Origin: Glycera tridactyla
Taxonomy: Eukaryota
DNA length: 64,000 nucleotides
Direction of reading: 5' to 3'
NCBI GenBank assembly: GCA_965644265.1
Contig: OZ286461.1
Coordinates: 121,706,001-121,770,000, forward strand
Shown here: in pieces, positions 806 to 23,240 of the stretch
Position numbering within the stretch: position 1 is the first letter of the stretch
Layout: each line of letters starts with the position of its first letter
Program-made: the position numbers and the translations under genes
Notes under the pieces: generated by a model
What the model was told of the DNA's origin: nothing
The model's database searches: none
What the model saw: the letters and a program-made list of their open reading frames with translations, nothing else

Positions 806-919
806 CTTTGATGTGAAACCACTGATCGCTTTCCTGTACAAGGCCCTCGTGACTATTTTGAAAAGAATAGTCCGGCTGGTGAATATCATTAATTTGGTGT
901 GCTTTGTTTGTTACTTCAG

Positions 920-1042
920 GTGGACGAGGGGGTGGATTTGGTGGAGGTCGCGGTGGTGGCGGATTTGGTGGAGGTCGCGGTGGTGGCTTCGGACGTGGAG
1001 GTCGCGGCGGTGGCGGTTTTGGTGGACGTGGAGGTGGTCGTG
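920..1042 (+). CDS. NCL: Nucleolin-like gene 1, RGG/GAR exon (phase 1-1)
   Basis: ttacttcag|GTGGACGAGGG...CGTG|gtgagt; 123 nt encoding GGRGGGFGGGRGGGGFGGGRGGGFGRGGRGGGGFGGRGGGR. Confidence 0.88.
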
Positions 1043-2362: not shown

Positions 2363-2436
2363 GTGTGCAATGATGATCAAACAGATGACGAGTCTGAAAA
2401 TGCTGAAGACAAATCGAGGCATTTGTCTGAGCACAT
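2363..2436 (+). ncRNA. SNORD15: C/D box snoRNA U15/SNORD15-like, compact double guide
   Basis: Stem GTGTGC/GCACAT, C box ATGATGA 2370-2376, AGATGACGAG-T-CTGA (D' 2394-2397) and CGAGGCATTTG-T-CTGA (D 2427-2430), both antisense to LSU CAAAUGCCUCGUCAUCU. Confidence 0.88.
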
Positions 2437-2687
2437 CTTATCGCCATCATTTCATCTGTACTTTCTGTACTTTCCCTAGATTCACTCAATTTAAAGTCCC
2501 TTGGCAGATAATTGTTACTTGAGAGTATCGTATGATCTACTAGGAGGCAGTGGTTGGATCTCGTCAATATGATGATCACTCCATGTTCGCTACTATTTGG
2601 GCATTTACTTCCTCAGCTCGAGAAAATTAGACATTTCTTGATTAAGTTAACCATGATAGGCTCACATAAAGTTTCAATATTGTGCGA

Positions 2688-2822
2688 TGCATTGTGGTAT
2701 CTCCCTGTTGGGCTTGTCTGTGCCCTTCAGCGGTCGTTTTATCCAATGCTAGATTAAATTCAGGACTGCATCGTTGGGCATTCACCTGTGTGATTTGTCC
2801 TGGTTTTACCCCTGAAACATCA
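2688..2822 (+). ncRNA. SNORA8: H/ACA snoRNA ACA8/SNORA8, copy 3
   Basis: Same architecture as copy 2; H box AGATTA 2751-2756, ACA 2817-2819. Confidence 0.88.
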
Positions 2823-3160
2823 ATTGGTAGCAAAAGCTTACTGCATATATTAGAATGTCCAAGAGTGATAATCTGGTCGAGAATTGATAGCATGGCTAGA
2901 TTTGAAGAAAATTCAGTGATCAATCGTACAAGCTTATTCACTAAGAGAAAGTGCTTTGCTGGCGTTGCGGTCGATTTCCATCATCGTAATTGTTATGGCA
3001 AATTTGAGTTTTCCCTTCAAAATTTTCTATCACTGAAATTTTGTGATTTCATGAAACTATGTTGGAAGTCTGATTTGATTCTCCATATTTAGATATGCTA
3101 ATTGGGAATCAGTAATCAAACTCACCAAATTTCAAATTTTGTCCAATTGTATTCATACAT

Positions 3161-3233
3161 GGTAGTTGATGATGAGATTCATTACCGCCCCAGTCTGATT
3201 TCTATGACTGATTGGTCGCTTCTGAACACTGCC
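3161..3233 (+). ncRNA. SNORD31: C/D box snoRNA U31/SNORD31, copy 3
   Basis: C box ATGATGA 3169-3175, guide TACCGCCCCAGT, D' CTGA 3195-3198, D CTGA 3222-3225, stem GGTAGT/ACTGCC. Confidence 0.87.
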
Positions 3234-3399
3234 ATTATGATATGAATGGTGCACATGGTCAATATCTAGTTTAAACATGCTGCTTGACCGTTTTGGCGAA
3301 ATCTGCAGGATTGTCAATCATGCCTGGAATACTGCAGCTTATTGAGGTATGAAATAACTGAGCATGATGGATGACTTATGTTGAAATTGTTTGTTGTAG

Positions 3400-3494
3400 G
3401 TGGAGGACGTGGTGGTGGTTTCACACCCAATCAGAAGAGAGGAATTCAGGAGTTCAAGGGTTCCAAGAAAAGTTTCAATGACGATAGCGACTGA
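3400..3494 (+). CDS. NCL: Nucleolin-like gene 1, terminal coding exon
   Basis: ttgtttgttgtag|GT GGA GGA CGT...GAC TGA, in phase with the previous exon; GGGRGGGFTPNQKRGIQEFKGSKKSFNDDSD* resembles the nucleolin/Nsr1 C-terminal F-x-G-x-K-x-x-F-D motif. Confidence 0.85.
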
Positions 3495-4110
3495 GCGAAG
3501 CCTGACCTGCATGAATAATGACATTCGCTGATCAGAACTGTGTCATGGACTGTGCCCTGGTTGGCAAAAAAACAGTTACTGATCATGTGGAATGCCGTAG
3601 GCAGCATTTTGATTAACATCAGAAAACAATACCACTGAACCGTGAGGAATGTCTGGATAGCATGGCTGACATGTCAAGTGTAATCATGATTAAGAAGGCC
3701 TCTCATGTTGTCGTGCAGATTCATCAGGATCCGGAGCCATCGTCCACACCATTACCCTTTTTTTATCAAGCGCATAAGCTCAGGATCGCCTGCTCATCAG
3801 TGAGCCTGTGAAGTGTGCTGCCCTGCGCGCAAGGAATAAGGATTGCTAACTATCCTTGGTTTGCTTATCTCACGCAAAACACTGCATAAATTTATCATGC
3901 ATGTGGAAGCTAAAGTTTCACTTGTATTGGCACATCCATTCACAATGGGTGAGGTCGTCAATGATTGTTTTCAACAGGTCATAGTGAATATGAAAGTTAT
4001 TATTGTTGAAGAATTATGATCTCTGAAGGATATAGTTGGTTGTATCATCCATTCATCAATCTACATGATGTTGCAAGTAGAAATAACCAATCCAGGTCCT
4101 GTCATTGATC

Positions 4111-4302
4111 AATTTCATGGTCATTATTTGTTTGGACAGTGCTATGCTCCTGCTCATACTGGATCGGAAAACTGCTGTTAAGAAAGCATTCATTACAGAT
4201 GTGACTAATTTCATGGTCATTATTTGTTTGGACAGTGCTATGCTCCTGCTCATACTGGATCGAAAAACTGCTCTTAAGAAAGCATTCATAACAGATGTGA
4301 CA
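4111..4302. repeat. 96-bp direct tandem duplication (2 copies)
   Basis: AATTTCATGGTCATTATTTG... starts at 4111 and again at 4207, near-identical. Confidence 0.9.
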
Positions 4303-4594
4303 GTGACTTGCTTGCCCTCATGCCAGCTGTGTTGGTGCTGACCAGTAAGCCAGAGGCTGTAGATCTCGCAGGCAATGCAAGGATTATTCCCTTGCTTGTA
4401 GCTCCTATGGTCAATTTACTCTGGGATTCTTATGCGGCTATCGGTTTAAGCTGAGTTAGCAATATGAAATGGTTTCAGCGCTACCACAGCTCTCAGGTGT
4501 GGGGTGAACATAGTCAATGTTGCTGGCGACATCCCCAACATCCCAAAAGTTGAAGTTGCTGACTGCTCTGCAGGTCAGAGTTTCAGTGAATATA

Positions 4595-5172
4595 CTGTAG
4601 TCTCGCGCGTGTACGCGCAGTGAGCGAAATCGTGACATCCATGGGAAAACCGGGGTGCGCGTACGTCCGAAGATGCGCGTATCGTAGTTTCGTGCAAACG
4701 CGCACCTTGTCGAAACTCTGTTTTTGCTTTATTCTTCGCCCTACCACGTGGAACGAAGCACTTACCAACACCCGGCCGCCATTTTTCTTGATGATGTAAA
4801 TATTAACTTTATTTCTCCCATGATGCTTTGCGCCTGCGAACCATAGTCCCGACAGAACTGTCTGCGATCGAATATTTGTATGACACAAATAGAGAACGAG
4901 GTTGGGGTTGGAGGGAACAGGGTACGCATGATTAATATTTTTCAACATCTCCCATCATGCAATGCGCGGAGGAGACGGATACAAGATGGCGATTCGTTGA
5001 CAATGATAAGTAAAAAGATCGATTTCTCGTTCATTCTTTCGGGTTTCACACATTTCAACCGTGATTTTTCGAGGGTGTGCGTATGCGCGAGGACATGCGC
5101 GTATTCCGACATTTTGACGAAACGGGGGATGCGCGTTTGTCCGAACCTGCGCGTACACGCGCGAGACTACAG
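4595..5172. mobile_element. CpG-rich non-autonomous DNA transposon with TA TSD
   Basis: Perfect TIR CTGTAGTCTCGCGCGTGTACGCGCAG / CTGCGCGTACACGCGCGAGACTACAG flanked by TA on both sides; retained CpGs suggest a young copy. Confidence 0.88.
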
Positions 5173-5793
5173 TAGCATGTATGTCATATGAAGAGCTACA
5201 TGCTACCTACCCTATATTTGTTCATCCTAGTGAACTGAATTCGCTAACTGTTCATGTCTAACCTGCACAGATATGAACAGCTATTCATAATCTGTGACCT
5301 GTTTATTTTGGTTGCTTAGGTTTGCAAGGGATCAGTTTTTATACAAAGTATATTGCTATTTTCTCTTGTGTTGAAAGAACACAGTTAAGGGAATTACTTT
5401 CCCTTCTCTGCCATGTTGTCGTCGTCTCTTCTCTGCCTCATTATCGTCGTCATCATCATTGATATTTTCATTTGAATTGTTGGATTTGCTTTCATTCGAT
5501 TGCAACTCCATTTGTGAAGAATGTTGTTTGAATTGTTAAGATTGTTGGAAGTGAAATAGCTTACATGAACTCATATGTAAATTGATCGAATGGCAGCAAT
5601 TGAGTGAGTGTAATAAAGTGTGATACAAAGTAGTCAATATCTTTGTTTTTCTTCCTACACCAAGATGGTCAGATGTGTGTGGCGGTTGGAAAGCTGGGTG
5701 ATGGCTGCAGGGAAGGGCACATCTATCTCTCATGGACCATTAGTTGGCAGTTCAAGTTTCCAGTCCACAAAATGTTCGCATGGATGGATGTTA

Positions 5794-6133
5794 CAGGGTT
5801 CCCGCAGGTCCTTATAAAGTCTTATATGGGCAACAGACAAAATTAAGGTCTTACAAAGGTCTTATTTTGGGCATTTATAGTTGCAGAGATGCCAACTGCT
5901 ACGATTTTGGAGTGGCAGCTACTCTTTTTAGACAAAAATTCTTGCATTTTACTGGTAGTGCTCCTATGAAAAATCAGGATTTTTCTTATTATTCCATTGC
6001 AAATACTGGCACTGCTACTCTTTGAAATTGGCACTGCTACTATTTTTGGCCATCAGAGGTTGGCATCTATGTAGTTGCGAGGTCTTACAAAGGTCTTATT
6101 TTCCAAGCTCAGCAGTCATTTGAGGGTGTCCAA

Positions 6134-6171
<38 letters not shown>

Positions 6172-6449
6172 AGTACCGATTGCTGTTGAAATACCAGTTG
6201 CCCAAGTGGAAATCTTATGTCTATTAGAGGGTACTACATCAGAAAACTTCAAAATGACCAAGTGCTTGTTCAGTGACAAGTGGCTAGAGAATGACAGCTA
6301 TAACAAGTGAATTACACCAGACATGAATTGCAGACTTTTATTATTCTCTTCTGAGCGAGTCTGTAGGTCTTATTTTGAGCGAAGGGTGGGTCTTACAAAT
6401 GTCTTATAAAGGTCTTATATTGGATTGGATCGAAGGTGCAGGAACCCTG
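5794..6449. mobile_element. hAT-like MITE with CAGGG ends and 5-bp TSD, containing a nested MITE
   Basis: CAGGGTTCC...GGAACCCTG, TSD TGTTA on both sides; subterminal AGGTCTTA repeats; inner element 5884-6071 (CAGAGATGCCAAC...GTTGGCATCTATG) flanked by TAGTTG. Confidence 0.75.
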
Positions 6450-8761
6450 TGTTAGCCAGCCTATCACATGCCTGTTGGCACCAGAAGACCCATGTGAACA
6501 ATTGATCCAGTCATCACCTGATTTCAGTGGTGTCCATCCCAAGGTAGCACTGATGAATGACTAGGGATATCACCAGTGTACTTTCTCTTCTAGTCTTATT
6601 GAATATCCCAGACCAGTACCTCCTGCATAGACTAGAAATGTTCAGATGATCATCACCATTGGAACTGCTCTCGGAATATCAGCACTAAGTTATGTGTAGA
6701 ATATATAATTTTGCTATTTATGCACAATGTTCTGGAGACCACAAAAATCCTGATACCACTCCTCTGCTGACCAGTGGCGCACGCTCCAGGTGATGCAAGA
6801 TTGCACAAAGACCACCGAGAAGTGTAGATTACTTCAAAGATCTGGAGATATCCCCTCATAGTTGGTGGCCCAAGTGAATTACCTGAATCCTGTGGATTGA
6901 CTCCTACCCCCCCCCCCCCACGCCTGTACAAGAGTATTTTTTCCCCAATGGGTGAGACAGATATAATACTGTCAGTCTGCCATATTGTGAGCCCAATCGC
7001 AGCAAAGCTTCTTAATCAAATTTATGAAATTTGGTAGGCATTCCCCTTGAGAGGGTCCAATTAATTGAGAAGCTTTTGGTCCATATGACATGATTTTCAA
7101 GGTCATTAGGTATTGCGGCTTTTCATTTGTTATGTTAGATTCTTTGGATATTGACAGTGCTCCTTTGTCCCTCCAATGACTCCAGCAATTATTTTTCACT
7201 CTTGAACACAAGCATACACCCCATCGAGGGTTCGCACAGGCCCTGAAGACGCCTCAAATTTCACCTTTCACCTCTGGCCCTAGACACGCCCTGAATTTGG
7301 TTAGAAGATCCCTACAATGATCTCCATCGGGAGAAACGAGCCACTATAAGTGATTCTCAAGGTTCCATCACCAAATGGTTCCCTCTGATAATTTCCTGCA
7401 GGGGCATAGCCCCCGTGTATGATGTATCATAGTCAGCATAGGGCATTGCTTCACTGGGTGCTTGCTGTAATCAGGCTTGAGTGTCAGCTTCCGGCCAGTA
7501 ACGGATCAACAGGGGGTGGGGCGCATTTCACTTTGTTTGGCGTGGGCCCCTTTTCAAAGGAATTAGAGGGCCAGAATGCCCGCTGCAGAGATGCCAACTG
7601 CTACGATTTTGGAGTAGCAACTATTTTTAAGCCAAAATTCTCTTTTTATATTTGCTGCTACTCTGAAAAATCAGGATTTTTCTTATTCCATTGCAAATAC
7701 TGGCACTGCTACTCTGTGATTGGCAGTGCTACAATTTTTGTTCATCAGAGGTTGGCATCTATGCCCCTACATCAGCAAGAGGGTCGCACTTGTACATGTT
7801 GCATGCACCCATTTTAAGAGATTTCTTGGGAGAAATGCCCCCATTTCTAAAATTAATGGGGCAAATCGCCCCGATTCAGGAAATCTTTGATCGATATACC
7901 ACTGGATACACCAGGAATGTGGTAATTCCGCACCCTGTGTTCAGTGTCTGTGAGAGTGATGCCTGCAGGGAACAACATCCAGCTTCATAGACCATAATAA
8001 CAAGGCATATACGTGATCATCTGCAGTGTATAACCCTAACCCCCCCCCCCCCCCCTCCCCACCACCGAGACCAGTGAATCAAGAGGGAGGACCAGTGAAT
8101 TCAGGCCAGTTCACTGGTCCTGCTGACTAGTCAATTATAAGTGCCCCATCCAGTGAATTGGATGCCTTCACAAAATCTGGAGGTGTCCCAGTTTGAAATT
8201 GCACCTTGAGTGTCTGTGAATTTCATATCATTTCACCTTCCATTGGGGACCCAGAATGAGGAGTCTTGGAAGATCCCACCCATGCTCATTGCATGGGCAT
8301 CACAATATAGCCCAGATGGTGCTGACGTGACGTTAAACCAGAATCAACCAACCAACCTGGAGGTGTCCAAGGAGTCTCCCAAACCACCTCTATCAAGACA
8401 ATGACAGTCACATTCCGAATCATATAAAAGAGTTGAGATGACCCTGTGTAGTGATGGGGATGTGGTCAGCAGAGACACATGCTGCCGAAGTAGCATTCAT
8501 TATCAGCAGTCGCAATTTTCAGCCAATTTAAAGATCTGAATGAAATATGGGGGAACAAGAACCTCATCAATTTAACTGATCCTCTGGACAGGTGAATGAG
8601 AATCGTTGAGTTCATACACTGATCTGGGTTGCTACATGCAATTGGTCAGTCAATTGTCATAAAAGCAGGTGATGCTGGTGAAGTCTATACCGTCGAACCT
8701 CTCTATAAAGACCGCCTTCAATCACATAAAAAGTGGTCTTTATAGGGAGGTGGTCTTTATA

Positions 8762-9764
8762 CAGGGTTCATACGCGTCCTGGAATCCTGGAAAAGTTATG
8801 GAAAATTGCCAAAGAGAATTCCAGGACTGGAAAAGTTATGGAAAATGAATTTTGCCAGGAATGTCCTGGAAATGTCCTGGAATTTTGAGAATTTGCTGAA
8901 ATATTGTATCTTTCATGATAAAAAGAATGACAAAAACATGGCATCGCCAATGTGTGGCGATCACGAATTTGAAATTCAATACTCAGTGATGAAAGTCTTC
9001 CGGAGATTCCCGGAATTCCGGAGATGACTTAATATCACTGTTGTTCTCCGGAAGTCAGTAGTCACACTTGGTAGTTCATCCACCCTAGCTCTGTTTATGT
9101 AATGGTCAGTCCGTTTATGTTAGTGGCAGGAAAGGAGAGCTAATATTGCCTCCAAAATTTACTGGTAAATCCTATATTCATTCCCCTATTTAATACCACC
9201 CACAACAGGCCAAATGAAAATGTAGTGCAGGGCAGTTCAATTGAAAAGTTGATGTAGACCCTGAAACGTATATTTCTGTTTTCACTGCTGTCATATTTCT
9301 AAATTATGTCTCCCCCCTGATGGGGGAGACATATAGAATTCGTATTGTCCGTCTGTCCGTCTGTCCGTCTGTCCGTCTGTCTGTCCGTCTGTCTGTCACG
9401 AAACCTTGTGAGCACGATTGCAGCAAAACTACTCATCCGAATTGGATGAAATTTGGAGGGTATATCCCTTGGGATAGTCCAATGAACTGATTAGATTTTG
9501 GTCCATGTGACATAATTTTCAAGATCACCAGAGGCCCAAATTTCACCAAGATTTCACCAAAGAGGTACCAACCTTAATTAAACTCAGTCTCTATTGTGAC
9601 CTTCCCGAAATTAACTACTTCTGTTGCCTCTCCATTAATGGTTATGTAAGATTCTTCCGGTCATACAATGCTCCTTGGTCATGCTTCAATGACTCCTGGT
9701 TGATTTCAATTCCCCTCTCTCCTCAAACAAAAGCCCAAACTTAATTAACTTCCCTGTTCGTGTG

Positions 9765-9823
<59 letters not shown>

Positions 9824-11586
9824 ACACATGTGTGTGCGCCTTGTTGCTACCTGTGAATATCCAATGGCTATTATACTTGGCATATTGGTATATAATTGCT
9901 GTTAGCAATTTGACAGTCATACCCCCCCCCCCCCGGTGTTGGTTCACAGGGTGGGGGGGGGGGGGGGGGGGGGGGTGAGGACGGGGGTGTATGTGTGTGT
10001 GTGCATGTACATGCTTCATGTTGCCAAGTGTGAATACCCCATGGCTACCATACATGTGTGTGTGCCTTGTTGCTACCTGTGAATATCCAATGGCTATTAT
10101 ACTCGGCATATTGGTATATAATTGCTGTTAGCAATTTGACAGTCATAACCCCCGGTGTTGGTTCACTGGGGGGGGGGGGGGGGGTGTATGTGTGTGTGCA
10201 TGTACATGCTCCATGTTGCCAAGTTTGAATACCCCATGGCTACCATACTTGTGATATTGGTATCCAATTGCTGTTAGCAATTTGAGAGTTATGAATACCC
10301 CCCTGTTGGTTGGGTGGGTGAAAGAGATGATGGTTTCCGGATAACTTCATGAATTTCAGGGCTAGCTGTCTCAAACTTTGTGTGCCTCCTTTCCTAGACT
10401 ATGGATTTACATCTTGAATTTCAAGGTCACTGAGTCCAAAATGGTTTCTTCATGAGTTTCGGGGGTAGCCTTCTCAAACTCTCATAGATTATGGCAACAC
10501 ACCCATCGATTTCTCAGTGGCCAGCTTCAATTTCAAGGTCACTTAATGGAAAAAAAAGGTCAAAAGAGTCTCTGGACAATCACTTCATAAATTACAGGGG
10601 CGGCTTTGACAAACTTGGTGTACAGACATTCCCAGGCTATGGGAAGATTTTGGGGTTGCCATCTCAGTGTGCATCTACAGGCTAGTGGTGATACACTGGT
10701 ATGGTGCCAACAGGTCAAAGGTCAAGGTCACAGGAGCTATTTTCAGAATTTGAGAATATGGACAAATCTCACTTGGTGAATTAATCTAGTTTCCTGGGTC
10801 ACTGATCAAGACCTGATCAAAAGCTTCCCTTGTCCCTTGTCCCAAGATTCCACTCAAACCCCTGACCCAAATTCAACTGAACTTCTCTGATGCCTAGGCA
10901 TATTCTTGAGGACAAATCCTACACAAAGAGAGCCCCCCCCCCCCCCCCCCCCCGTACCCCAGTACACCTCATACCCCAGGACACATTTTCATACTCATGA
11001 CTAGGTATACTACATCATTGGTCACTCAAAGGATAGTTGTCAACCAATAATGTCTAGCTTTTCAGTGAGCATGCTCACTTGAAGATGAATAAGCAAGCAG
11101 GTGGACCCAGGCATGTATGCGGGTAGTGAATAATTACAAAGTCTGGGGGAGACATATTGAGTGAGGAGGTGCCTCACTAAAATTCTAGTTTCTGTTTGTA
11201 TTAATAGTTTAATAGTGCAGGGAATAGATAATGATAGTATATACCATAATATTCTTTTTGTCACAAGCGATCCCTGTGAAAGTTCGTGAATCCTCCAAAA
11301 TGGGTTTACGCGCTTTTCAGGAAATTTGGTCATGGGTCACTTTCATCACTGAATACTGAATAAAAACCCAATCAGACCATCTGAAAGATCTCACTCTACT
11401 AGTCATTCTGGTGTGTATGTTGTGAAAATGGAACAATATTAGCGAAGATATGACACAAAATGAGTCAATGACTGCTCATTTTAGATTTTCATACTCATTT
11501 GCATGTCCTGGAATAATTGCTTGGTGACCTGGAAATGTCCTGGAAAAGTTATGGAATAAAATTCTGCCAAGCGTGTATGGACCCTG
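8762..11586. mobile_element. hAT-like non-autonomous element (5-bp TSD) inserted into a Tc1/pogo MITE
   Basis: CAGGGTTCATACGC...GCGTGTATGGACCCTG, TSD TTATA; the host MITE halves are at 8690-8761 and 11587-11679. Confidence 0.78.
9305..10800 (-). mobile_element. Helentron/HINE-like elements (reverse orientation) with microsatellites
   Basis: Terminal hairpin TGTCTCCCCC-ctgat-GGGGGAGACA followed by (TCCG/TCTG)n, (GT)n and poly-G tracts, and a reverse copy of the GTGACCTTGACCTTTGACC core at about 10710-10745. Confidence 0.55.
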
Positions 11587-11808
11587 TTATAGAAAGGTCA
11601 TTTACTGTTGAAAATACTACCATGGCCGCAGATCAGGGTGGTCTTTATAGAGAGGTGATTTTTAGAGCAGGTTCGACTGTATATATATATATATATATAT
11701 ATATTTGTGCACTCCCTGACCTTCTCTTTGTCCGTGCAGGACTGCATGGAATTAACCTGTGGGACGTCTGAAATAGTTGTTTTGAATATTGGCAAATTCT
11801 GGTTTCAG

Positions 11809-11972
11809 ATTTGGCTACATCGAATTTCCTGATGCAAAAACAGCCGAGAAAGCATTCACATCAATGAAGGGAAAAGAAATTCTTGGAAGACAGGTGCAAC
11901 TTGATTATGCATCTGAGCTACAAAAGGCTCCTTCTGGTGATTTTCGTCAAGGGAATTGGCTCTCTGGTAAAG
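11809..11972 (+). CDS. Nucleolin-like module 2: RRM C-terminal half exon (phase 2-1)
   Basis: tggtttcag|A TTT GGC TAC ATC GAA TTT...AAA G|gtatgt; FGYIEFPDAKTAEKAFTSMKGKEILGRQVQLDYA = RNP1, helix 2 and beta 4 of an RRM. Confidence 0.85.
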
Positions 11973-12196
11973 GTATGTCATTGCCATGATATTTCAGATT
12001 CTATGGGTGGGATCATTCCCAGGGATGTGTTTTTACTCACAAACAGAAGGCCAAGCAAAGAGCATTCTCTGCTGATTATTTAGGCTTTTAGATCATGAAA
12101 ATTGGACCAGTATTAATGGAGATAGAGCACAATGTTTGTATGGAGTTGCAGTAGCCTTCAATCACCAGTTGTTTGAGTTTTTTGGGGAGGTTAACA

Positions 12197-12778
12197 CATT
12201 CATTTGAGCCTGTGCCTTTTTTCAAGGGTATCGGGGACTATGATGCCCGAAATTAGCAGATGGGTTGCACTTCCTTCATATTCGTGATGAAATGCCTTCT
12301 TTACTCTAACTTAGTAGGGGCTATTTCCCCCACTTCTTGATAATCCACGATGCAACCCATTTATTTGAGCCTGTGCCTTTTTTCAAGGGTATCGGGGACT
12401 ATGATGCCCGAAATTAGCAGATGGGTTGCACTTCCTTCATATTCGTGATGAAATGCCTTCTTTACTCTAACTTAGTAGGGGCTATTTCCCCCACTTCTGA
12501 TAATCCACGATGCAACCCAAACTCAAACATAGCTTTGTAAATTGGCATTGGTTTGTAATGAAACTCACATTTATTTGAGCCTGTGCCTTTTTTCAAGGGT
12601 ATCGGGGACTATGATGCCCGAAATTAGCAGATGGGTTGCACTTCCTTCATATTCGTGATGAAATGCCTTCTTTACTCCAACTTAGTAGGGGCTATTTCCC
12701 CCACTTCTGATAATCCACGATGCAACCCAAACTCAAACATAGCTTTGTAAATTGGCATTGGTTTGTAATGAAACTCAC
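12197..12778. repeat. About 210-bp tandem triplication (first copy 161 bp) in an intron
   Basis: CATTTATTTGAGCCTGTGCC... at about 12197, 12358 and 12568, almost identical; internal inverted repeat GGGTTGCA/TGCAACCC. Confidence 0.9.
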
Positions 12779-12970
12779 TGATCGACTGTTCACATTCCCA
12801 GTTAGTCCATCAAAACCAAATCAGATGCGAAATGGTGAGTTGAGCAGTTGAAAACATTTCAGTCACATTTGGATTAGACAGCCTATAGTTATTGATTTCT
12901 GTCAATCTCCAGCAGTCAGGCATTGCCTCATCAGATGATTGTCACTGTAAGTGAATGATTTTTGTTGCAG

Positions 12971-13003
12971 CCCCTGGAGGAGAGGGTGGTTTCAGAGGCA
13001 AAG
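12971..13003 (+). CDS. Nucleolin-like module 2: 33-nt RGG-type microexon A
   Basis: ttttgttgcag|CCCCTGGAGGAGAGGGTGGTTTCAGAGGCAAAG|gtaagt; phase 1-1; APGGEGGFRGKG. Confidence 0.78.
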
Positions 13004-13220
13004 GTAAGTTCAGTACAGCTGCTCCATTTCGTCTCCACTCATGTCCAACTCAAAGATTTCACAAATGCCTCGAATTCTGGAAATCCTGGACGCAACCCTG
13101 CGTTTATAAACAGCATTGTAAATCGGCATTGGATTGAAATGAAACTCACGGACAGACTGTTCACATTTCTGGTGACTAGAAATGTGAACAAGATAGAGTT
13201 TACCGTTTTTTTCACCCATG

Positions 13221-13445
13221 CAAGGTTGAATCCAGAGGGGGGCATGGGGGCATTTCACACATTTTTCCAGTGTGGGCCCCTTTTTGAGACAATCATGGGC
13301 CATGATACCCACTAAATCAACAAAAGGTTTGCACTATGCCATGTTAAGTGAACCCATTTTGGGACATCATGTGTAGAAAGGCCCCCATTTCTCAAATTTA
13401 AGGGGCCCAATGCCCCCATTACAGAAAATCCTGGATGCAACCCTG
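13221..13445. mobile_element. hAT-like MITE with 6-bp TSD
   Basis: CAAGGTTGAATCCAG...CTGGATGCAACCCTG flanked by CCCATG on both sides; a related copy lies at about 14291-14486. Confidence 0.7.
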
Positions 13446-13809
13446 CCCATGTTGATTTCACACCAACGATAGGACTGGCAGCAGCCATATCTGTTGCCCC
13501 TCACACAAAACTTGTTCAATAATGTCGGCAGTTTTGCTGCATAGATACAATAAAATGACAGAAAATCGTCCTGAGAAGCACATAGACTGAAATCAGGTGT
13601 GATGATTGCTGGTAGATCTATACAATCCAAATCAGACGCAAAAGTGGTGACTTGGGCATCTGAAAACATTTCATTCACATTCGGCAGATTTGAAAGATGA
13701 TAGTTATTGATTTCTGGCAATGTGTAGCAGTCAGGCATTGCCCCATCAGATGTCTGTGAGAAATGCTTTGGTATCTAAATTTACAACATTGTCACTGTTT
13801 TTGTTGCAG

Positions 13810-13842
13810 GCCGTGGTGGAAAGGGTGGATTCAGAGGCAGAG
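13810..13842 (+). CDS. Nucleolin-like module 2: 33-nt RGG microexon B
   Basis: tttttgttgcag|GCCGTGGTGGAAAGGGTGGATTCAGAGGCAGAG|gtaggt; phase 1-1; GRGGKGGFRGRG. Confidence 0.8.
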
Positions 13843-14702
13843 GTAGGTTCATCACAGCTGCTTTATTCTCTTTTTCATAATAATCTCAGTATAACCAGGG
13901 ATGTGATTGTTCCACGGATCCATGGATTTCCGGGTTTTGGATCACAAATGCAACAATCCATAGGGCAGGAATAAGCATTTTATGCTGATTATTGTGAATT
14001 TTAGATCATGAAAATCAGACCAGAATGAGTGGAGATAGAGCACAGGGTTTATATGCAGTCATGGTAGCCATTAGTTTCCAGTTGTGGAAGTTTCTTGGTC
14101 CACGTAATCTCCGGTCAGCTTTATTCAGGGTTTTTGGTTGTGAGCCAATCACATCCCTGTATAACTGAGCAGCATATAGCACATGAAAAGTGACGCCAAG
14201 CTTTATAATTTTCGAGAAATAGTCACTTGATTTGGCCAGTTTCCCAAAACTTGCCTTGACCTAATTTAAAGATCATGGAATTTGCAGATTTGAGGGTTGA
14301 ATCCAGAGGAGGGCATGGCAGCATTTCACTGATTCTAGCCAATGTTGGCACCTTTTCAAGGCAAAAGGGGGTCACAATGCCCCCGAAATCAACAAGGAGG
14401 CTTCACTTTTGGGTATTGAGTGAACCTATTGTGGAAACTTTTGTGAAGAAATGCCCTCAATTTTGCAAATCCTGGATGCAACACTGGGACTTTGTTTGCC
14501 ATATTACAGCATGGGTGAACCCGATGCAGCATGATGAATCTAGTTCAGTTGCTCCATAGAAACATGTTGGAAAAAAATCTCAGAGCATCTTTGATTTTCT
14601 TTCAACTTTCAATAATACTCAATTTGTTCCTCATGTTTATCACATTCATCTACATGCCGTTAAACATCAATCAATCAATCATATTTATCTTGTTTGTTGT
14701 AG

Positions 14703-14743
14703 GAAGAGGTCGCGGAGGATTTTCCAAATTTGGAAGGAAGTAG
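14703..14743 (+). CDS. Nucleolin-like module 2: terminal coding exon
   Basis: ttgtttgttgtag|GA AGA GGT CGC GGA GGA TTT TCC AAA TTT GGA AGG AAG TAG; the acceptor TTGTTTGTTGTAG is identical to that of the gene 1 terminal exon. Confidence 0.75.
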
Positions 14744-16683
14744 TGTACTCACTGAAGGCTTTGGGTCTGTCGTGGTCGTACAGTGTTTTTATGTTGGTCT
14801 GGCACTCAGCATTGCTAATAACACTGCCGTTAGTATTTCAAGCAAAAGCTGTGATAATTTGAGTCGTGCAACTCCGCAGGCTACCAGCTATCTGGTTACA
14901 GTTCGCTTCACAACTGTATGATGTCAGTAACATGTCTGTGAACTACCCAGGTCACATGCACTTGTTCAGCGATCCCGATTAAGTCTGCGCTGTGTATAAA
15001 ATAGGAAGTATTGTATCAGGCTCGTGTTTCAACATTCTGGCCAGATACGCAGTTAAAAATGCCATCAATGGACTCACTAATTCCATAGTGAGGTTGCTGG
15101 ACTGTCAGCTACTTCCACTTGATAACCTTTTTTACCTGTAATATTGTGTTCAAGGTTTGTGATTGATGCTTGTAGGGGACAGAGCATCTAGCATCTATAA
15201 ATCTGGAGCGTGTATACATCCTTCAGGATGATGCCGTTGAATTCTAACTAACCAACCAATCCCCTAACAGAACATTCCTACTGATAGGCAGCAGTCTGCA
15301 TCCTTGTGGAGTAGAGAATTTCAAATATTGCCCTTTTTATATCGAGAGAATAGCTATATTTTCATAGATAATGGGCTTGAGTGTTCAGGTTCACCAACCA
15401 CATATGATATGTGGCCAAGTGATTTGCCCACCCAAAACTGACTGCACTAGGTTGTAAGATACTGTGGCATATTTGAGAATCTACCATATCACATCAGTAG
15501 TAAAACAGTCTTTCATGATATGTGGGTGGTTGAAAGCATTCAGAGGAAAATATTTCCACAATTGTCAACAGTGACATCATTGTTAGTTGATATGTTTTAG
15601 CCTCTGGACATTTCATTAGGTCTTATTAATCATTGTGTGGAATTTTGGTGGTATGATGTTACTTTGTTTAGGATTTGTTGTTTGAAAAAGCATTGTATTC
15701 TTTGCTGATGATGCATATTGAGTCTCATGATCGTTGAGTGTTGAGCTGTCAGAAACATAGTCACAGTGAATCGCCCAGAGATGCTTTGCAAGGTCTCTTG
15801 AGGGTGCCCAGAGGAAACGGTTCAGTCATGTGCATGTAGGGTTGCAGGAAGAAGGCAGAGTATGTGTAGTCCTAGCGGTTTGAGGTAGTTGTGTGAGAGA
15901 TAAGGATTGAATAAGAACAATACCAACATCATTGTTCATGGCGGACACAATTTAATGATCCAGAAAATGTCTGGCTCCGGTTAATGGAAGGTGACCTTGG
16001 GTCTTTGGATTTTATTGATATCACAGGATAACATGGTTTTCCAGGGCAAATGTAGCACGCCAGGCACAAGACAGAACCGGGGATATTCAGCTGATTATTT
16101 TTGTGTTGGACTCTTGAAATCAGTTCGAGATTGATGGAGATGGAGCACAAAATATGCAGGCAATTCATGTCTCATTCCTTTTGCCATGGAGCATTAAGTT
16201 GAAGATTTTTTTGGATTCTGGAAAGACCTGTTCCACAAAGTTCTACATTGGCTATCTTCAGAAAATTCAGGAAGGTATTATGGGACATTTTTCTTTGGGT
16301 ATTGTTCTGATCTTTCATTCATTTGTTTGTTTCAATACATGTGTAATGCATATGAGAATGTTGATATGTTATTGTCTGAGAAGTTGAGGGAATATGGCTG
16401 TCACCATGTCAAGGTCACAGTTCATGGGCTGTATCTGCACAAATGCGATTGTCATGATTGGAATAAAATGGTCAAATAATTGTCTGAAGTCCTTATTTTT
16501 GATCTTGGGCTATCCTCGTCATCTTCAATCCACACTTATACTAAGAGAGAGTTTTCTGTATTTCCAAAAGCACCAGATTTCAAACTTTAGACCTGATTTC
16601 AGAAAATGTTGTGGGGGTGGGGGGCGGGGGGGGGGGAGGCTGGGGTGATGAATGCCATAAATTTTATTTACAATGACCTGATA

Positions 16684-17023
16684 CAGTAAAACCTCTTTTG
16701 TGAGACCGCACTCTTTTGAGAGACTGCCCTTCATCGCTTCTTTCCTATTTGACAGTCAAATATACAGTCGAACCTGTCTATAAAGACCGCCTTCAGTTGC
16801 ATCGAAAAGCGGTCTTTATGGGCAGGTGGTCTTCATAGAGAGTTCATTTACTGTCAAAAATCCTATCATGGTCGCACCTCAGGGCAGTCTTTATAGGCAG
16901 GTGGTCTTTATAGAGAGGTGGTCTCAAGAGCAGGTTCGACTGTACCTCCAATCAGATACCACCTGTCTTGAGAGACCGCTTGTGCATGGCATTTTGGGCG
17001 GTCTGACAAAAGAGGTTTTACTG
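16684..17023. mobile_element. Nested Tc1/pogo MITEs (inner copy 16765-16942)
   Basis: Outer CAGTAAAACCTC...GAGGTTTTACTG and inner CAGTCGAACCTG...CAGGTTCGACTG, both flanked by TA. Confidence 0.85.
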
Positions 17024-18934
17024 TATTCAACACTGCTCCTACATGTAAAAAATAGTCACTGTTTGACATGCCTCGATGGAGCCCAATAAAGTTTTTTCAG
17101 TCTCAGTCTCATGATTGAGAGTGAACAACAAACAAATAGGCATTAAGCAGAATATAATATTTCAGCAATTGTAGTCATCAACAAATACATGAAGTGGTTC
17201 AGTGATTGGGACAACCAGCATAACTGATACAGTGGAATCTGCGACAAGAATGACAACTTTGTGAATTGGACAATTTTTCACCTATTGGGGACAGAGATGA
17301 CAATTGACATTCAGAGGCATTTCCTCAGCGGTTATCGGACCACCAATGTGGGTGAATGGCTTTGATTGCATTTGAATGCCAGTGAGTGTGATTGTTGGCA
17401 GTTCCACTATGGAGATTTCGAACTGTTTAAAATTGTCGCCGTCGAATGCCTAGTCAGTATTTTCTTTTATGATCAAGTGAGAGTGAGTGCTTGAATGCCA
17501 GTGAATCTTGGCGAATGCCAATGAATGTGCAGCAACCATGACTATGAGAATGCTAATGACTGCCACAGTATGCAATGAAACCATCCTGATGTCAGAAATT
17601 GCTGGTGAATGATGTAAAATGTCACACAATCATGTGCATCAACTATAGATTGAAAGACTTATGAATAGCTCAACAGGAAGGCCTGCAGGCGAATGTCAAT
17701 GAATGCTGTAGATTGTCATCTCAGTGTGAAAGCGGCTAAATGGGTTTTCTTCCAGTTGATCAAGACCAAACAGTATTCGGAGACCAATTTCAGCAAATTA
17801 AGGTGCTAAATGGAAAAAAGGAGTTTACGAAAAAGTGGTTTCATCGCAGTTTTCACTGTCTTAAGAGTACATGATAACTCAGTAGAGTTATACAGTTGAA
17901 CCTGCTCTAAAGACCACCACTATAGAGGCCACCCTGCGCTGTGACCATGGTAGTATTTTCAACAGTAAGTTGATGTCCACAGCTGATTAGAGAGTGGTGA
18001 CAAATAAAGCAGCCTCACCGGAGACTTGACAGTAATGCCATGTGCTAAGATCATTTTTTATGAACACCAGCAGATCATGGAGGTACATGTATGAATAATC
18101 CCAGCCATGCCCATGGCATGGGCGTCACAATATAGCATGTACGACATTAATCCACAACCAACCAACCAGTTCAATCATGTCTGGGCAATGGCAAACATAA
18201 ACACTCAAAGTAAGCTCTTAACAGGTGACTTTCCACAAAACTGAGTGGCGCTACTATTCATATTAGATCATTTACACTGAGAAGGGACATCTAGTGTATA
18301 ATGACAAGCAATGGTGATGCCATTCTTTAGTGAATAATTCAAATTTCTCCCCAGATTACCCTCAAAAGGGACCCACCCTTAACATAGTATATGAACTGCC
18401 CCATGTCCCTCTCTGAATACAAGCCAGCATTAATACAATGTAAGTACATGTGCATGTCTATTACATTACTGACTGGAGCATCATGTACAGTATATGACTG
18501 AACATAAAACCACAACAGGGATAAGTTGCAAAAAACGCTCTTATATGGCACTAATAGAAAAGATCATAACAACAAGCAACAAGAAAACAACAGCAAAACC
18601 TGCAGGAAGCCAGGTAAATTTGGTCAAATATCCAATCATAGACAGAGTCAAACAGCAACAGTTAAATGGCTCGCATATGCAGTTTTGCATACGCACAGTG
18701 ACCTCAGAAAAATTCTTTTCACTGCTACTGCAGATAATAACAACCAGGTAATGTCATGAAAATAATCAATTGTTTCCGCCAGAGCTACTGCCAAATACAA
18801 GGGATCCAGTAAGTGACATGACTGACAAATATGAGCAGGTTGATGAAAACGATTTCCATCAAATGCATGGGGACAAGAAGCTACATACACTATATCAGAT
18901 TAAAGTTGTATTTTGATTTGGGCATTTGATTGTA

Positions 18935-19903
18935 CAGTGAAACCTGCTCGAGCGTAAACCTGTGCTAGGCGAAATCCTGTCTTAAGCGCATACCCCAAGG
19001 TCCGCCCGAACGTTTTTTCACTATAATTGACCTGTATTAAGCGAAAACCTGTCTAACGCGAACAACGGAACGCCATTTTCGGTCCCGCGGGGCCCACCAA
19101 CCTGTATTAAGCGAGAAGCGAAGTTGACATTCCGCAGGAAATCAGCAATGATCTCGCCCACGAATCCGAGAAAGAACCGACACAGGTATCTGTCGCGATC
19201 CCTGATTGGCCAAATCGCCGAAATCGCGGCGGAATCGACCAATCAGCGACCTGCTTTCATGGGGCTCTCGTTGCGAGATGTAAACAATGTGCGCAGAAGG
19301 CGATTTCTGACCATCTGCGCAGGTTTCGGAACCACGAGGAAGCCGATCTTACGAATGAATTTATCACGTTTGCTCGTATTTTCTACGGAAAATTCGACTT
19401 GTATACAAATGTTTCCTTGGCCTAGGTGACATTCGTGTACGGACGTGTGGTTTTTCGAGGTCTTCGCGCCCTGGCTTCACATGGTGCGATGACTGCGTTC
19501 ACGGTTTTTCGCAGCTCCCCCCGGCTCTGACAATGTGAGCAAGTCTACATTCGCGCAAAAAGCGAAGTTCACGGTGTTCTCCCCCATCTCCCCCGCCTCC
19601 CCCCGTCTCCATAATGTGAGCAAGTCTAGATTCGCGCGAAAAGCGAAGTTGACATCAGCTCACCCGTGATACGAACCTCGGTTTTCGCAGCTCCCCCCGT
19701 CTCTCTGACAATGTGAGCAGTTCTACAGGTTTTTGTGGATTTTTTGTGATTTTTTGTGTATTTTTTTGTGATTTTCGTGGATTTTTTGTGTATTTTTTGT
19801 GATTTGGGTCAACCAGTAGTGAAATCCTGCGCTAAGCAAAATCCTGTCTTAAGTGAAAAAAAAATTTGGTCCCGTGACTTTTCACTTAAGACAGGTTTTA
19901 CTG
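18935..19903. mobile_element. About 970-bp CpG-rich pogo/Tigger-like non-autonomous element
   Basis: TA-CAGTGAAACCTG...CAGGTTTTACTG-TA; internal tandem repeats at about 19500-19720. Confidence 0.85.
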
Positions 19904-21639
19904 TATATTATATGATTGTACTGTACCATGTGAAAATAAAAGTATTTGAATTTGAATTTGAATTTGAATTTGATTGCTAAGCTTCACTTCAGCAATAATC
20001 AGAAGGGGATCAGTAGAGTGTGTCCCGTCAATCAGCTGCTAATTATCAATGAAAATACAGCATCGGCCATCCCTCATGTAGAGGGCACGTATTGGCCACA
20101 GTCCCATCTTTTGCCATCATTATTAGCATGTGTACATATATTAATTTAATAATCACTTGAATAAAGTAAACACCACTTATCTAAGATATTGATACGGAGA
20201 ATCAGCTTAATTAAAAGTGTAGATATACAGGAACAGATACAAGAAATGTTGGTTATTGATAGTGATGATTATGGTATACGTGGTTACATAGCAGGTCTGC
20301 TTCTCAACACACGTCCTTCTAACTGATACTGATGAACCTGCACTGAGCATGCACAGTACTGAGCAAGAGCTATCCTTGACCAACCATGCTGGATTTGTCC
20401 AGCTAGATCATTTTCAATTTAGTTTGCTGGTTTGGAGCAGCTACTTTTGCCGCTTCTTTGGCTGTCTGCCTAGGACAGATTTAAGCGTAGTTGGCTAAAT
20501 ACCTGACTCAATGATGGCAACTTGCTGAAACGAGTCACTTAGCTGAAACATTTGTAAGTCAGAGGCAGTATGAAGCAATATCATCATGATGGGAAGGTCC
20601 ATCAAACATCTCGAAAATACAAAACAATTCAGGCATTCAATGGGAAGATAAGTCTTGGATAAAATTGGGATATGGCTCTGTGCTGCAGGCACAAAGCACA
20701 AATTATTGTAAAACTGGTTTGGATTCGACAGTTCATAACTCAGATGGGTATTTTTCAATCCTAATGCATTTCCTTTCTCAAGAACAGTGCTTTTCTTAGA
20801 ATGAAAGCTTTGCTATCCGGCTTGAATATTAGTTTTCATCCAGTTACACAATTAGATAGTCCATCAATAGCTTCATCCAGATTACTGTCAGGTGCATAGA
20901 GGTGTGTATGAACTGTCTGCTACCCCCACTTGACCTGTCTGGTTCCCCATCATCTCGTGCCCATGATCATGAAAACAAGATGATGGGGAACCAGAAAAGA
21001 CATCAAGCGAAAGTAGATGACTGTTCAGACACACATCTACACATGAAGAACTGATGAACTTTGATGTCCTAACAGACTATGTAATTGGCTGGAGGCCTAC
21101 ACCGATATGTTTTTCAAAACAAATTATAGTGCCTGAAACAAGAAGAATGGATCAGATTCCAGAGTCGATTGTGAATAGCAAACTTGCTTTACAGTGGTGT
21201 GTGCCCCATGCTTACAGTACAAAGCCATCACATTTCCTGGTAAGCCCAGTCGCGGCTCTAGTAACTGTGAAATAGTGTGCCTGATATCAGAGACTGCGCC
21301 AGCAGTGCTAGAGAAGTACAGAGGTACAGAAACTGCTAGCTAGACTCGACCCCAGCAAAGCAGGACTGGTTGATAGACCCTGCAGAATGCTCAAGGAGCT
21401 GAATGAAGAACTCGTCTGACTCTATAAACTATTTACCCAGTTGTTGAACCAGGCTATTGGAGAGAAGCAGGAGTAACCCCAACCTTCAAAACATAGCATT
21501 CACTGAAGGCACCCCTCACCTCACCTCAACTCAAATGCCCCTAATATAGGCAGCACACAAAGATGGTTCAACTAATGCAGTGGAACTCAATTTTGATATA
21601 AGGGTTGGATCCATCAATTGATGCTTGTTGGAAGTCTGC

Positions 21640-23240
21640 ATAACTGGCTGCCATTCATTAGCAAGGCCTCAGGACAGTCAACTCCTCTAGAAAAATCAAT
21701 TCACGTCCCCAAAATTAATAGGCCTACTTGAAATAAAAACCATGCATGGCCTGCATTCATTACGGTGTGCTGCAAAATACATCTATGTCAAATTGTGTAT
21801 GGCGAGATACATCTGCCATTTTTAAGAAATTCATTTTTGTCCCTAAAATTCATCAGGATTGTCAGAATAATCCAGCCATGGCCGTCATCCATCAGGAAAT
21901 ACTATAAAAAAGCCCACGTCAAATTATGGTGTTGTATGGCTATGACAGCCACCACCTTTAGAAAAATCCATTTTTGGAAACTGATTTTGCCTCAATTCAT
22001 TCATGCATGTTGGCAGACACTCATTGGGGAATCCTATGGATTGTAAGTTGACAGCCACCATCTTTAGGAAGATACTTTTCTGAAAACTGATTTTTTTCAC
22101 TGAAACCAATCAGGCTTGTCAGAAGATCCCATCCATGGCAGGCATACTTTCGGGGATGCTGTGAAAGGATTCTGTGTGAATATTGGTGTGACTCAGAACA
22201 GCCATCATCCTCAGAAAAATCCATATCTGCAGAACCTGAAAAATCAGAACGCTCAGCAACTCAACATGACTTAAGGTGGAATCGGATGCCGATGCTGGGG
22301 CAACCACAACGAAGTTAAAGTGAGATGAAAAAGCATCACACATGAACCCAAGAGCTAACGCCAGGTGTCATCAACTTATGTTTGTTGCAAAATAATGTGA
22401 CCAAATGCATTAGACAACACCTTGACGTTTCAAGCTCCAATCAATATGGGTTCCGCTCTTATGACTCCATGCAAATGGTGCTCTACCTCCACCAATTATC
22501 CTCTGATTTTCATCATCTAAACTTAAATAATCAGCATAAAATGCTCCCTCTTATCATATCCATGGAATGATGCATTTGTGATCAAAAACACAGAAATCCA
22601 TGGATCCGCAGAACAATCACATTCCTATGTACAGGGAACAATGCGTGATCGTGGATGGCTAATCTTCATCAAAAGTTACTGTTGACCTCACCGTAAAACA
22701 AGGAATGTTTTTAGGCCTGTTTCAATTCCTCATCTCCATTAATGACCTGCCTCTGAGAGTGTCAACCCAGGTATGCCCATTCGCAGACGATTTCCTACTG
22801 AAGCAGACCATCAGGACAATGAAAGATCCATATGTCCTGCAGAAAGTCTTGGATGATGTAGAGAAGTGGGCACAAGACTCGGGCATGAGATTTGATGTTA
22901 CCAAATGTGACATACTTCACCTCACAAGATCAGAATGCCCACTTACCAAGATGTACACACTATGTGTACACCCTCTACAAGAGGTAAATGATACAAAATT
23001 GTAAAGAATGGTCAACAGCGAAGTTGTGGTGCCTACGACTGAAATCCTAATTTCAGCGGACACACAAACAGACATCACAATTCAGTACAAGCATCTAATG
23101 ATTCCAGCAGCCTTCAAGAAATTCTACAGACCAGGCACCTGCAGCCCTGGGAAGCCGTGGCGGAGCCATCAGCACAATACTCCTTAAGACCGTTCTGCTG
23201 ATTATCACACAAGGCACAACAAGCGTTTCATCCAGAGTAC
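21640..23240 (+). mobile_element. Decayed non-LTR retrotransposon (CR1/L2-type RT); boundaries approximate
   Basis: Broken RT motifs SSNQYGFR, QGMFLGLFQFLISINDLP, FADD, DDVEKWAQDSGMRFDVTKC; frameshifts and stops. Confidence 0.8.

What the first reader, a model, noticed from the sequence alone, without database searches (positions are those of the whole stretch)
11809..14743. Second nucleolin-like C-terminal module: alternative 3' end or divergent paralog
Seen: an intact spliceable RRM half-exon, two RGG microexons and a terminal exon lie 8 kb after the stop of gene 1, with the same terminal acceptor TTGTTTGTTGTAG. It has far fewer RGG repeats and ends FSKFGRK* instead of EFKGSKKSFNDDSD*. I found no convincing promoter or N-terminal exons between 3.5 and 11.8 kb, and none of the snoRNAs in its introns. 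Inference: a duplicated 3' cassette could be spliced from the shared phase-2 RNP1 donor of gene 1 to give a low-RGG nucleolin isoform with altered condensate behaviour and no U31/ACA8/U15 production from these introns.
Basis: partly seen in the sequence, partly recalled or inferred. Interest (0 to 1): 0.72.

Follow-up and report, generated by a model that had tools for sequence, protein, structure and literature searches.

The report
Expressed second nucleolin 3' exon set
Eight kilobases after a nucleolin gene lies an old copy of its last three exons that is transcribed and correctly spliced, and it most likely gives the gene a second ending with a different half RNA-binding domain and a much shorter glycine/arginine tail, though the upstream exon it joins was not seen.

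Summary
Four exons lie on the + strand:
- exon A, 11809-11972, the C-terminal half of an RRM, starting inside RNP1
- two 33-nt RGG microexons, 12971-13003 and 13810-13842
- a terminal exon, 14703-14743, ending FSKFGRK*

All have AG/GT borders and compatible phases. The terminal exon shares a 14-nt acceptor with gene 1's terminal exon.

New here: contigs from two studies (runs behaving as RNA) carry exon A joined to the terminal exon, with exactly the 66 nt expected from both microexons. The 3' UTR runs to at least 16300. This rules out a silent dead duplicate.

No RRM N-terminal half exon exists anywhere in the window. This rests on tblastn with 348 proteins and a dedicated HMM whose positive controls scored 1e-16 to 2e-24. 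No snoRNA lies in the module's introns.

One contig extends exactly 30 nt (k-1) beyond exon A into sequence that is not the intron. That is the signature of an upstream exon with two continuations. Exon A is under purifying selection against a related exon (dN/dS about 0.2).

Best reading (about 0.6): an alternative 3' end of gene 1. The 5' junction itself was not seen.

The parts
920..1042 (+). Gene 1 (canonical nucleolin) GAR exon, phase 1 to 1, 41 codons of RGG/FGG repeats
   Evidence: Translation. It aligns to residues 483-526 of the full-length relative P0274.
3400..3494 (+). Gene 1 terminal coding exon with the canonical nucleolin C-terminus (GIQEFKGSKKSFNDDSD*), stop TGA at 3492-3494
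   Evidence: Translation. It is 62-63% identical to the ends of P0185 and P0274. Acceptor motif.
11809..11972 (+). Exon A: C-terminal half of an RRM. It starts in phase 2 inside RNP1 (x|FGYIEF) and ends in phase 1 after ...QGNWLSGK
   Evidence: Pfam RRM_1 positions 41-69 of 70. tblastn E 8e-23 to P0006. Contigs cover 11808-11970 at 99-100% identity in runs X1 and X14. dN/dS about 0.21 against the L001 exon.
12197..12777 (.). 210-nt unit in about three tandem copies inside intron 1 of the module. It is intronic filler, not coding.
   Evidence: family D1.
12971..13003 (+). RGG microexon 1 (A-PGGEGGFRGK-), 33 nt, phase 1 to 1
   Evidence: Its inclusion in RNA is inferred from the exact 66-nt segment between the aligned pieces of contig records 3 and 11.
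13810..13842 (+). RGG microexon 2 (G-RGGKGGFRGR-), 33 nt, phase 1 to 1. It is a tandem duplicate of microexon 1 together with its flanks.
   Evidence: Duplicate families D13, D14 and D18. Same 66-nt arithmetic.
14703..14743 (+). Terminal coding exon of the module (G-RGRGGFSKFGRK*), stop TAG at 14741-14743
   Evidence: Acceptor identical to gene 1's over 14 nt. Contigs cover 14701-15130.
14744..16300 (+). 3' UTR of the module. It is transcribed at least to the end of the stretch laid; its true end was not determined.
   Evidence: Contigs X1 record 7 (15101-16300), X14 record 13 (15101-16138) and X5 record 22 (15378-15745, polyA library). Candidate AATAAA/ATTAAA signals lie at 16462, 17085, 18003 and 18899.

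Best explanation
Module 2 is an old tandem duplicate of the last three exons of the nucleolin gene: RRM C-half, GAR exon and terminal exon. Its GAR exon shrank to 33 nt and was then duplicated again.

The module is transcribed and spliced A-m1-m2-terminal. Most likely it serves as an alternative 3' end of gene 1. In that model, transcripts that pass gene 1's own last exons and polyA site splice from the phase-2 donor inside RNP1 of the last RRM, upstream of the window, to the acceptor at 11809.

The predicted product keeps nucleolin's N-terminal part and the first half of the last RRM. Three things change:
- The RNP1 strand, helix 2 and strand 4 are replaced (FGYIEF type instead of the clade's canonical FGFVEF type).
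- The GAR tail shortens to about 35 residues with two RGG and seven RG, against at least 48 residues in gene 1.
- The conserved C-terminal GI(Q/K)EF.G.KK.F.D motif is lost.

Shown: the exons, their splicing to each other, their transcription, the protein-level constraint, and the absence of 5' exons and snoRNAs. Inferred: the identity of the upstream donor and any functional consequence.
For: 1. Spliced transcripts. X1 record 3 (659 nt) and X14 record 11 (688 nt) each align to 11808-11970 and to 14701-15130. The 66 nt between the two pieces equals 2 + 33 + 33 - 2, which is what both microexons predict. Unique intron bins have depth 0-3, against 12-23 on exons and UTR. The runs therefore behave as RNA, in two studies. 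A third, polyA, run holds the UTR.

2. No N-terminal RRM half in the window. tblastn with 348 RRM and nucleolin proteins hits only exon A and gene 1's two exons. Residues 1-430 of the clade's full-length nucleolin P0274 find nothing. An HMM of last-RRM N-halves scores its controls at 2e-24, 1e-16 and 2e-16, while the best window hit is E 0.2 and the best in 1-11808 is E 4. In relatives this exon lies only 120-260 nt upstream of the canonical C-half exon.

3. Contig ends. The X14 contig carries exactly 30 nt (k-1) 5' of 11809 that are not the intron. The same 30-nt overlap is seen between contigs at 15101-15130. This is what a de Bruijn branch at the first base after a donor looks like, so the upstream exon has a second continuation. 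The module's own three internal junctions caused no such break.

4. Phase. The canonical intron splits RNP1 as GG|G in L002. Exon A supplies the third base of a Gly codon.

5. Constraint. Exon A against the L001 exon gives dN 0.29 and dS 1.38. pN is below pS both before and after the first in-exon Met, and the flanking introns are only 22-30% identical.

6. Duplicate origin. The exon order and phases are the same, and the 14-nt terminal acceptor is identical.
Against: - The junction to the upstream exon was not read, and the 30 letters were not displayed.
- Gene 1's RNP1 donor and its own C-half exon lie outside the window, so identity of the shared exon could not be checked.
- The k-1 break would also arise from a donor inside gene 1's 3' UTR, or from abundant pre-mRNA.
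- The X1 contig stops 1 nt before exon A, which implies a second upstream neighbour there. That neighbour may be unspliced RNA or another exon.
- The intron would be longer than 11.8 kb and would have to skip a functional polyA site.
- A relative's 7.4-kb contig shows no second module within 6.4 kb after its nucleolin stop.
- No database protein or transcript with this joined architecture was found.
Confidence: 0.6

Rival explanations
1. Non-productive read-through. The module is a decaying partial duplicate. It is transcribed only because gene 1 transcripts run past their polyA site. It is spliced from a donor downstream of gene 1's stop codon, so the module sits in a 3' UTR and makes no protein.
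For: - A donor inside gene 1's abundant 3' UTR would also give the exact k-1 contig break.
- Gene 1 has no canonical AATAAA or ATTAAA until 5612.
- Exon and intron of the microexon duplication have diverged equally, 82% against 83-84%.
Against: - The reading frame is open through four exons with matching phases.
- dN/dS is about 0.2 for exon A, including the part before its first Met.
- Splice sites are intact, and the acceptor phase matches the RNP1 intron.
Confidence: 0.15
2. Separate paralogous gene. Module 2 is the 3' part of a second nucleolin-like gene whose 5' exons, with their own RRM N-half, lie outside the window. Gene 1's 3' end would then sit inside its long intron, or the assembly order would be wrong.
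For: - The FGYIEF-type exon forms its own clade with exons from two other species (97/97 support). This fits an old, independently evolving copy.
- The 5' partner is outside the window in any case.
Against: - It needs interleaved or nested genes on the same strand.
- A lowly expressed private upstream exon should not produce the k-1 branch, given that the module's own junctions do not.
- The listed best 120 hits of each of two profile searches contained no full-length protein with an FGYIEF-type last RRM from this clade.
Confidence: 0.15
3. Independent short transcript. A promoter in 3.5-11.8 kb drives a non-coding first exon spliced to 11809. Translation then starts at the Met inside exon A and gives a protein of about 75 residues with an RGG tail.
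For: - An in-frame ATG lies at 11864-11866.
- Only 10400-16300 was laid with reads, so an exon in 3.5-10.4 kb is not excluded.
Against: - Codons 1-18 of exon A, upstream of that Met, also show pN 0.30 below pS 0.71.
- The RNP1 residues are intact.
- No unique, near-identical contig piece of exon-like depth is listed in 10400-11808 (table 8).
Confidence: 0.07
4. Dead partial duplicate that is never part of an RNA.
For: None after this work.
Against: Spliced contigs in two studies, and UTR contigs in three.
Confidence: 0.02

Closest known systems
Alternative last exons that arise by tandem exon duplication (mutually exclusive 3' cassettes). Stated from general knowledge of alternative splicing, not from a paper read here.
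   Same: - The duplicated exon set lies downstream of the original.
- Order, phases and even the acceptor motif are the same.
- It has its own stop and 3' UTR, and it is spliced in RNA.
   Different: - The cassette has three to four exons rather than one.
- It starts in the middle of a folded domain, inside RNP1.
- It lies beyond the first cassette's polyA region.
- Sharing of the upstream donor is not demonstrated.
Canonical invertebrate nucleolin, for example P0274 (JGI metatranscriptome, named nucleolin), P0185 and Mytilus or Haliotis nucleolin-like proteins
   Same: - Exon A is 57% identical to residues 431-486 of P0274 and carries the clade motif DxASEL..AP.GDFRQG.W.
- A glycine/arginine tail follows it.
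   Different: - RNP1 is FGYIEF, not FGFVEF.
- The tail is about 35 residues rather than 50-70.
- The conserved end GI.EF.G.KK.F.D(SD) is absent.
- There are no intronic snoRNAs.
Nucleolin gene as a snoRNA host (vertebrate NCL introns host snoRNAs, from general knowledge; gene 1 of this window, note s1-329814)
   Same: Gene 1's last two introns carry SNORD31 copies and other C/D snoRNAs.
   Different: Module 2's three introns give no Rfam match even at E<=1.

Membership tests
RRM domain (Pfam PF00076), C-terminal half | RNP1 octamer [RK]-G-[FY]-[GA]-[FY]-[ILV]-x-[FY] and a match to the second half of the RRM_1 profile | tested here: met
   x-G-F-G-Y-I-E-F, with the Gly codon completed by the first base of exon A. 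RRM_1 positions 41-69 of 70 match with E 1.6e-4 and 21.9 bits, against a cut-off of 20.7.
RRM domain (Pfam PF00076), whole domain | An RNP2-bearing N-terminal half in the same transcript | tested here: inconclusive
   No such exon lies in the window. RNA shows 30 nt of an unidentified upstream exon.
Nucleolin | C-terminal glycine/arginine-rich (GAR/RGG) tail after the last RRM | tested here: met
   The tail pieces are PGGEGGFRGK, RGGKGGFRGR and RGRGGFSKFGRK. It is short, with two RGG and seven RG.
Nucleolin | Conserved invertebrate C-terminal motif GI(K/Q)(E/D)F.G.KK(T/S)F.D | tested here: not met
   The module ends GGFSKFGRK*. The motif is present in gene 1 and in P0185, P0274, P0247, P0205, P0275 and P0276.
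Nucleolin | Acidic N-terminal region plus the preceding RRMs on the same polypeptide | not testable with these tools
   These exons would lie upstream of the window. No transcript or protein of this species was found in the databases.
Alternative last-exon cassette from tandem duplication | Homology of the downstream exon set to the upstream one | tested here: met
   Exon order and phases are the same. The 14-nt acceptor is identical, and the terminal-acceptor region is 73% identical over 45 nt. Gene 1's own C-half exon could not be compared.
Alternative last-exon cassette from tandem duplication | The downstream set is transcribed and spliced | tested here: met
   Contig records 3 and 11.
Alternative last-exon cassette from tandem duplication | Both ends are spliced from the same upstream donor | tested here: inconclusive
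   The contig ends exactly k-1 = 30 nt upstream of the junction, which indicates a donor with two continuations. The letters were not seen.
snoRNA host introns | Rfam-recognisable snoRNA in the introns | tested here: not met
   No match at E<=1 in 10500-16500, against four gathering-level matches in gene 1's introns.

The most novel reading that the evidence does not exclude
In a group of marine invertebrates the nucleolin gene carries a conserved second 3' cassette that is chosen by splicing inside the RNP1 motif of the last RRM.

One gene would then make two nucleolins. They would differ in the RNA-contacting half of that RRM, in RGG tail length and in the conserved C-terminal motif. Only the canonical form would be processed through the snoRNA-bearing introns.

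The FGYIEF-type exons P0006 and P0118 would be orthologues of this cassette in other species.
Probability: 0.45. Interest if true: 0.6.

Novelty: new member of a known kind. Interest (0 to 1): 0.45.

Why it matters
If the shared donor is confirmed, this is a natural experiment on nucleolin. The N-terminal and first RRMs stay the same, while half of the last RRM, the length of the methylatable RGG tail and a conserved end motif are swapped.

That would let one test what the tail and the last RRM contribute to nucleolar localisation, rRNA binding and phase behaviour in an animal that makes both forms.

It would also be an unusual case of alternative splicing that exchanges half of a folded domain, through a multi-exon terminal cassette that lies beyond the first polyA region.

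If the link is not confirmed, it remains an ordinary expressed remnant or a paralogue.

Tried and rejected
Searches for this species' own transcript or protein, all without result:
- The search for homologous proteins with the 67-aa open frame around exon A: no candidate.
- Two profile searches (A1, A4): only other species' nucleolins among the best 120.
- The metagenome scan with exon A alone found nothing.
- The same scan with the alignment A3 found only generic RRM proteins at 45% identity or less over the RRM part of exon A.

Attempts to reach the DNA upstream of the window through mechanical ORF calls: three ORFs of the window are not on record.

Contigs of the related exons:
- They are mostly under 2 kb.
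- The one long contig (L088, 7.4 kb) shows a compact canonical 3' end and no second module. A weak FGHVEFP hit there is chance.

Other checks that led nowhere:
- A look for decayed snoRNAs in the module's introns: none.
- ORFs of the 3.5-11.8 kb spacer: no Pfam domain.
- Literature search for a nucleolin alternative 3' cassette: nothing relevant. The assembly accession of P0118 is not in the library.

The N runs at 54029-54192 and 63707-63973 were left alone.
Full report
**What is in the sequence**

The window opens inside the last part of a nucleolin-type gene (gene 1).
- An intron with two SNORD31 copies occupies 1-919.
- A GAR exon follows at 920-1042.
- A second intron carries further C/D snoRNAs.
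- The terminal exon is at 3400-3494 and ends GIQEFKGSKKSFNDDSD*.

This end is the canonical one. It aligns to the last residues of full-length invertebrate nucleolins such as P0185 and P0274.

From 11809 a second set of exons lies on the same strand.
- Exon A, 11809-11972. Its first base completes a Gly codon, then it reads FGYIEF...QGNWLSGK.
- Microexon 1, 12971-13003, PGGEGGFRGK.
- Microexon 2, 13810-13842, RGGKGGFRGR.
- Terminal exon, 14703-14743, RGRGGFSKFGRK*.

All have AG acceptors and GT donors. The introns after exon A are all phase 1, as are gene 1's GAR introns.

Exon A is a true RRM C-terminal half. It matches RRM_1 positions 41-69 of 70 above the gathering score. It hits homologous exons at up to E 8e-23.

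The 14-nt acceptor TTGTTTGTTGTAGG is exact at both terminal exons, where 0.06 matches are expected by chance. The two microexons are a tandem duplication of about 840 bp that includes intron, 82-84% identical. Apart from the terminal acceptor region, no DNA similarity to gene 1's introns remains, so the duplication is old.

**Is it expressed?**

Yes. I laid contigs of four public runs on 10400-16300.

In X1 (organism A, study P1) a 659-nt contig aligns to 11808-11970 and to 14701-15130. In X14 (organism B, study P5) a 688-nt contig does the same. In both, 66 contig letters lie between the two pieces.

The predicted splice product gives 2 nt (11971-11972) plus 33 plus 33, minus 2 nt of alignment overlap. 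That is 66, so both microexons are included. The microexon letters themselves were not displayed, so this is arithmetic.

Unique intron bins have depth 0-3, while exon and UTR contigs have 12-23. The runs therefore behave as RNA rather than genomic DNA.

Contigs continue colinearly from 15101 to at least 16300, so the 3' UTR exceeds 1.5 kb. A polyA metatranscriptome (X5) holds 15378-15745 without a mismatch.

**What joins 11809?**

No exon in the window can supply the missing first half of the RRM.
- tblastn with 348 RRM and nucleolin proteins, at permissive settings, hits only exon A, the GAR exon and the two terminal exons.
- P0274, a 549-aa nucleolin of the same clade, maps its residues 431-486, 483-526 and 526-549 onto exon A, the gene 1 GAR exon and the gene 1 terminal exon. 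Its residues 1-430 map nowhere.
- An HMM built from 203 last-RRM N-halves finds the control exons in L002, L003 and L004 at 2e-24 to 1e-16. In the window its best hit is E 0.2, at 63.3 kb. Upstream of exon A its best hit is E 4.
- The spacer's ORFs have no Pfam domain.

In relatives the N-half exon lies only 120-260 nt before the canonical C-half exon.

The RNA nevertheless shows an upstream exon. The X14 contig runs 30 nt past the first base of exon A, and the alignment stops at the intron border, so those letters are not the intron.

Thirty is k-1 for Logan's 31-mers. The same 30-nt overlap joins neighbouring contigs at 15101-15130. A contig that ends exactly k-1 before a junction is what a de Bruijn graph gives when the preceding exon has two different continuations.

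The module's three internal junctions did not break the contigs. Faint pre-mRNA of a lowly expressed private gene is therefore an unlikely cause. An exon shared with an abundant transcript fits better. Gene 1's canonical isoform is the obvious candidate.

This is inference.

The X1 contig stops one base before exon A. This points to a second upstream neighbour there that also ends in G, possibly unspliced RNA.

**Is it under selection, and is it older than this species?**

Five related exons came from metagenome or draft-genome contigs: P0006, P0012, P0029, P0036 and P0118. All begin at the same phase-2 position in RNP1.

In a tree of last-RRM C-halves, exon A groups with P0006 and P0118 at 97/97 support. 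The canonical FGFVEF-type exons stand apart: P0012, P0274, P0029 and P0036.

Exon A and P0006 also share the donor right after W-L-x-x-K-G.

Against the P0006 exon (L001):
- dN is 0.29 and dS is 1.38, a ratio of about 0.21.
- pN is below pS both before and after the first in-exon Met.
- The flanking introns are at random identity.

The exon has therefore been kept as coding sequence read from upstream.

One caveat applies. Gene 1's own C-half exon is outside the window. I cannot tell whether P0006 and P0118 are orthologues of the second cassette or simply the canonical exons of closer relatives. A relative's 7.4-kb contig has no second module within 6.4 kb after its nucleolin stop, so the module is not universal in the clade.

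**Mechanism proposed**

The last three exons were duplicated in tandem. The distal copy lost its snoRNAs, or never had them, and shortened its GAR.

The distal copy is now used when the RNP1 donor pairs with 11809 instead of the proximal C-half exon.

The product would carry a hybrid last RRM, a tail of about 35 residues and no canonical end motif.

I put 0.6 on this reading. The rivals are:
- non-productive read-through splicing, 0.15
- a separate interleaved paralogue, 0.15
- an independent short transcript, 0.07
- a silent duplicate, about 0.02

**Comparison and novelty**

The kind is known: alternative last exons born by tandem exon duplication. I found no described case for nucleolin, and none among the database proteins seen.

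It fails the nucleolin C-terminal motif test and the snoRNA-host test. It passes the RRM-half and GAR tests.

I file it as a new member of a known kind, of moderate interest, with the decisive junction still to be read.

**Limits**

Exons were searched singly by reference.
- Contig depths cannot rank expression.
It concerns other coordinates.

Noticed in passing
window 12197-12777: A 210-nt unit stands in about three tandem copies inside the first intron of the module. Two of the copies are 100% identical.
   Followed up: no
window 10597-10793, 11582-11778, 11976-12172, 14931-15127: Interspersed repeats reach summed contig depths of roughly 4,000 to 23,000 in runs X1 and X14. The one at 11587-11650 also occurs inverted in gene 1's intron at 328-390, 87.5% identical. 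They are probably SINE-like elements.
   Followed up: partly
window 3495-5612: Gene 1 has no AATAAA or ATTAAA between its stop codon and 5612. Its polyA site is therefore either non-canonical or about 2 kb downstream. This bears on how easily transcription could read through towards the module.
   Followed up: no
L088 98-990: A relative's nucleolin 3' end is very compact: N-half 98-241, C-half 363-554, GAR about 667-800, terminal exon about 930-990, with introns of about 100 nt. It has the same three-exon layout as gene 1. No second module follows in 6.4 kb, and a minus-strand gene call further downstream (5463-5927) has a weak EF_assoc_1 match.
   Followed up: partly
L085 222-419: The database's gene call for P0118 reads an in-frame TGA as W (atg tct att tga agg). 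The real exon starts at the AG just before YGYIEF. It ends ...TFNGK with donor gtaaga and has no GAR, so it is a third variant of the FGYIEF-type exon.
   Followed up: partly
window 47300-49400: Tandem repeats bear long open frames on both strands. A unit of about 340 nt encodes ...[37 protein letters not shown]... on the minus strand. Their nature was not examined.
   Followed up: no
window 9780-10300: (GT)n and G-run microsatellites are embedded in a 105-nt repeat with three copies, in the spacer between gene 1 and the module.
   Followed up: no
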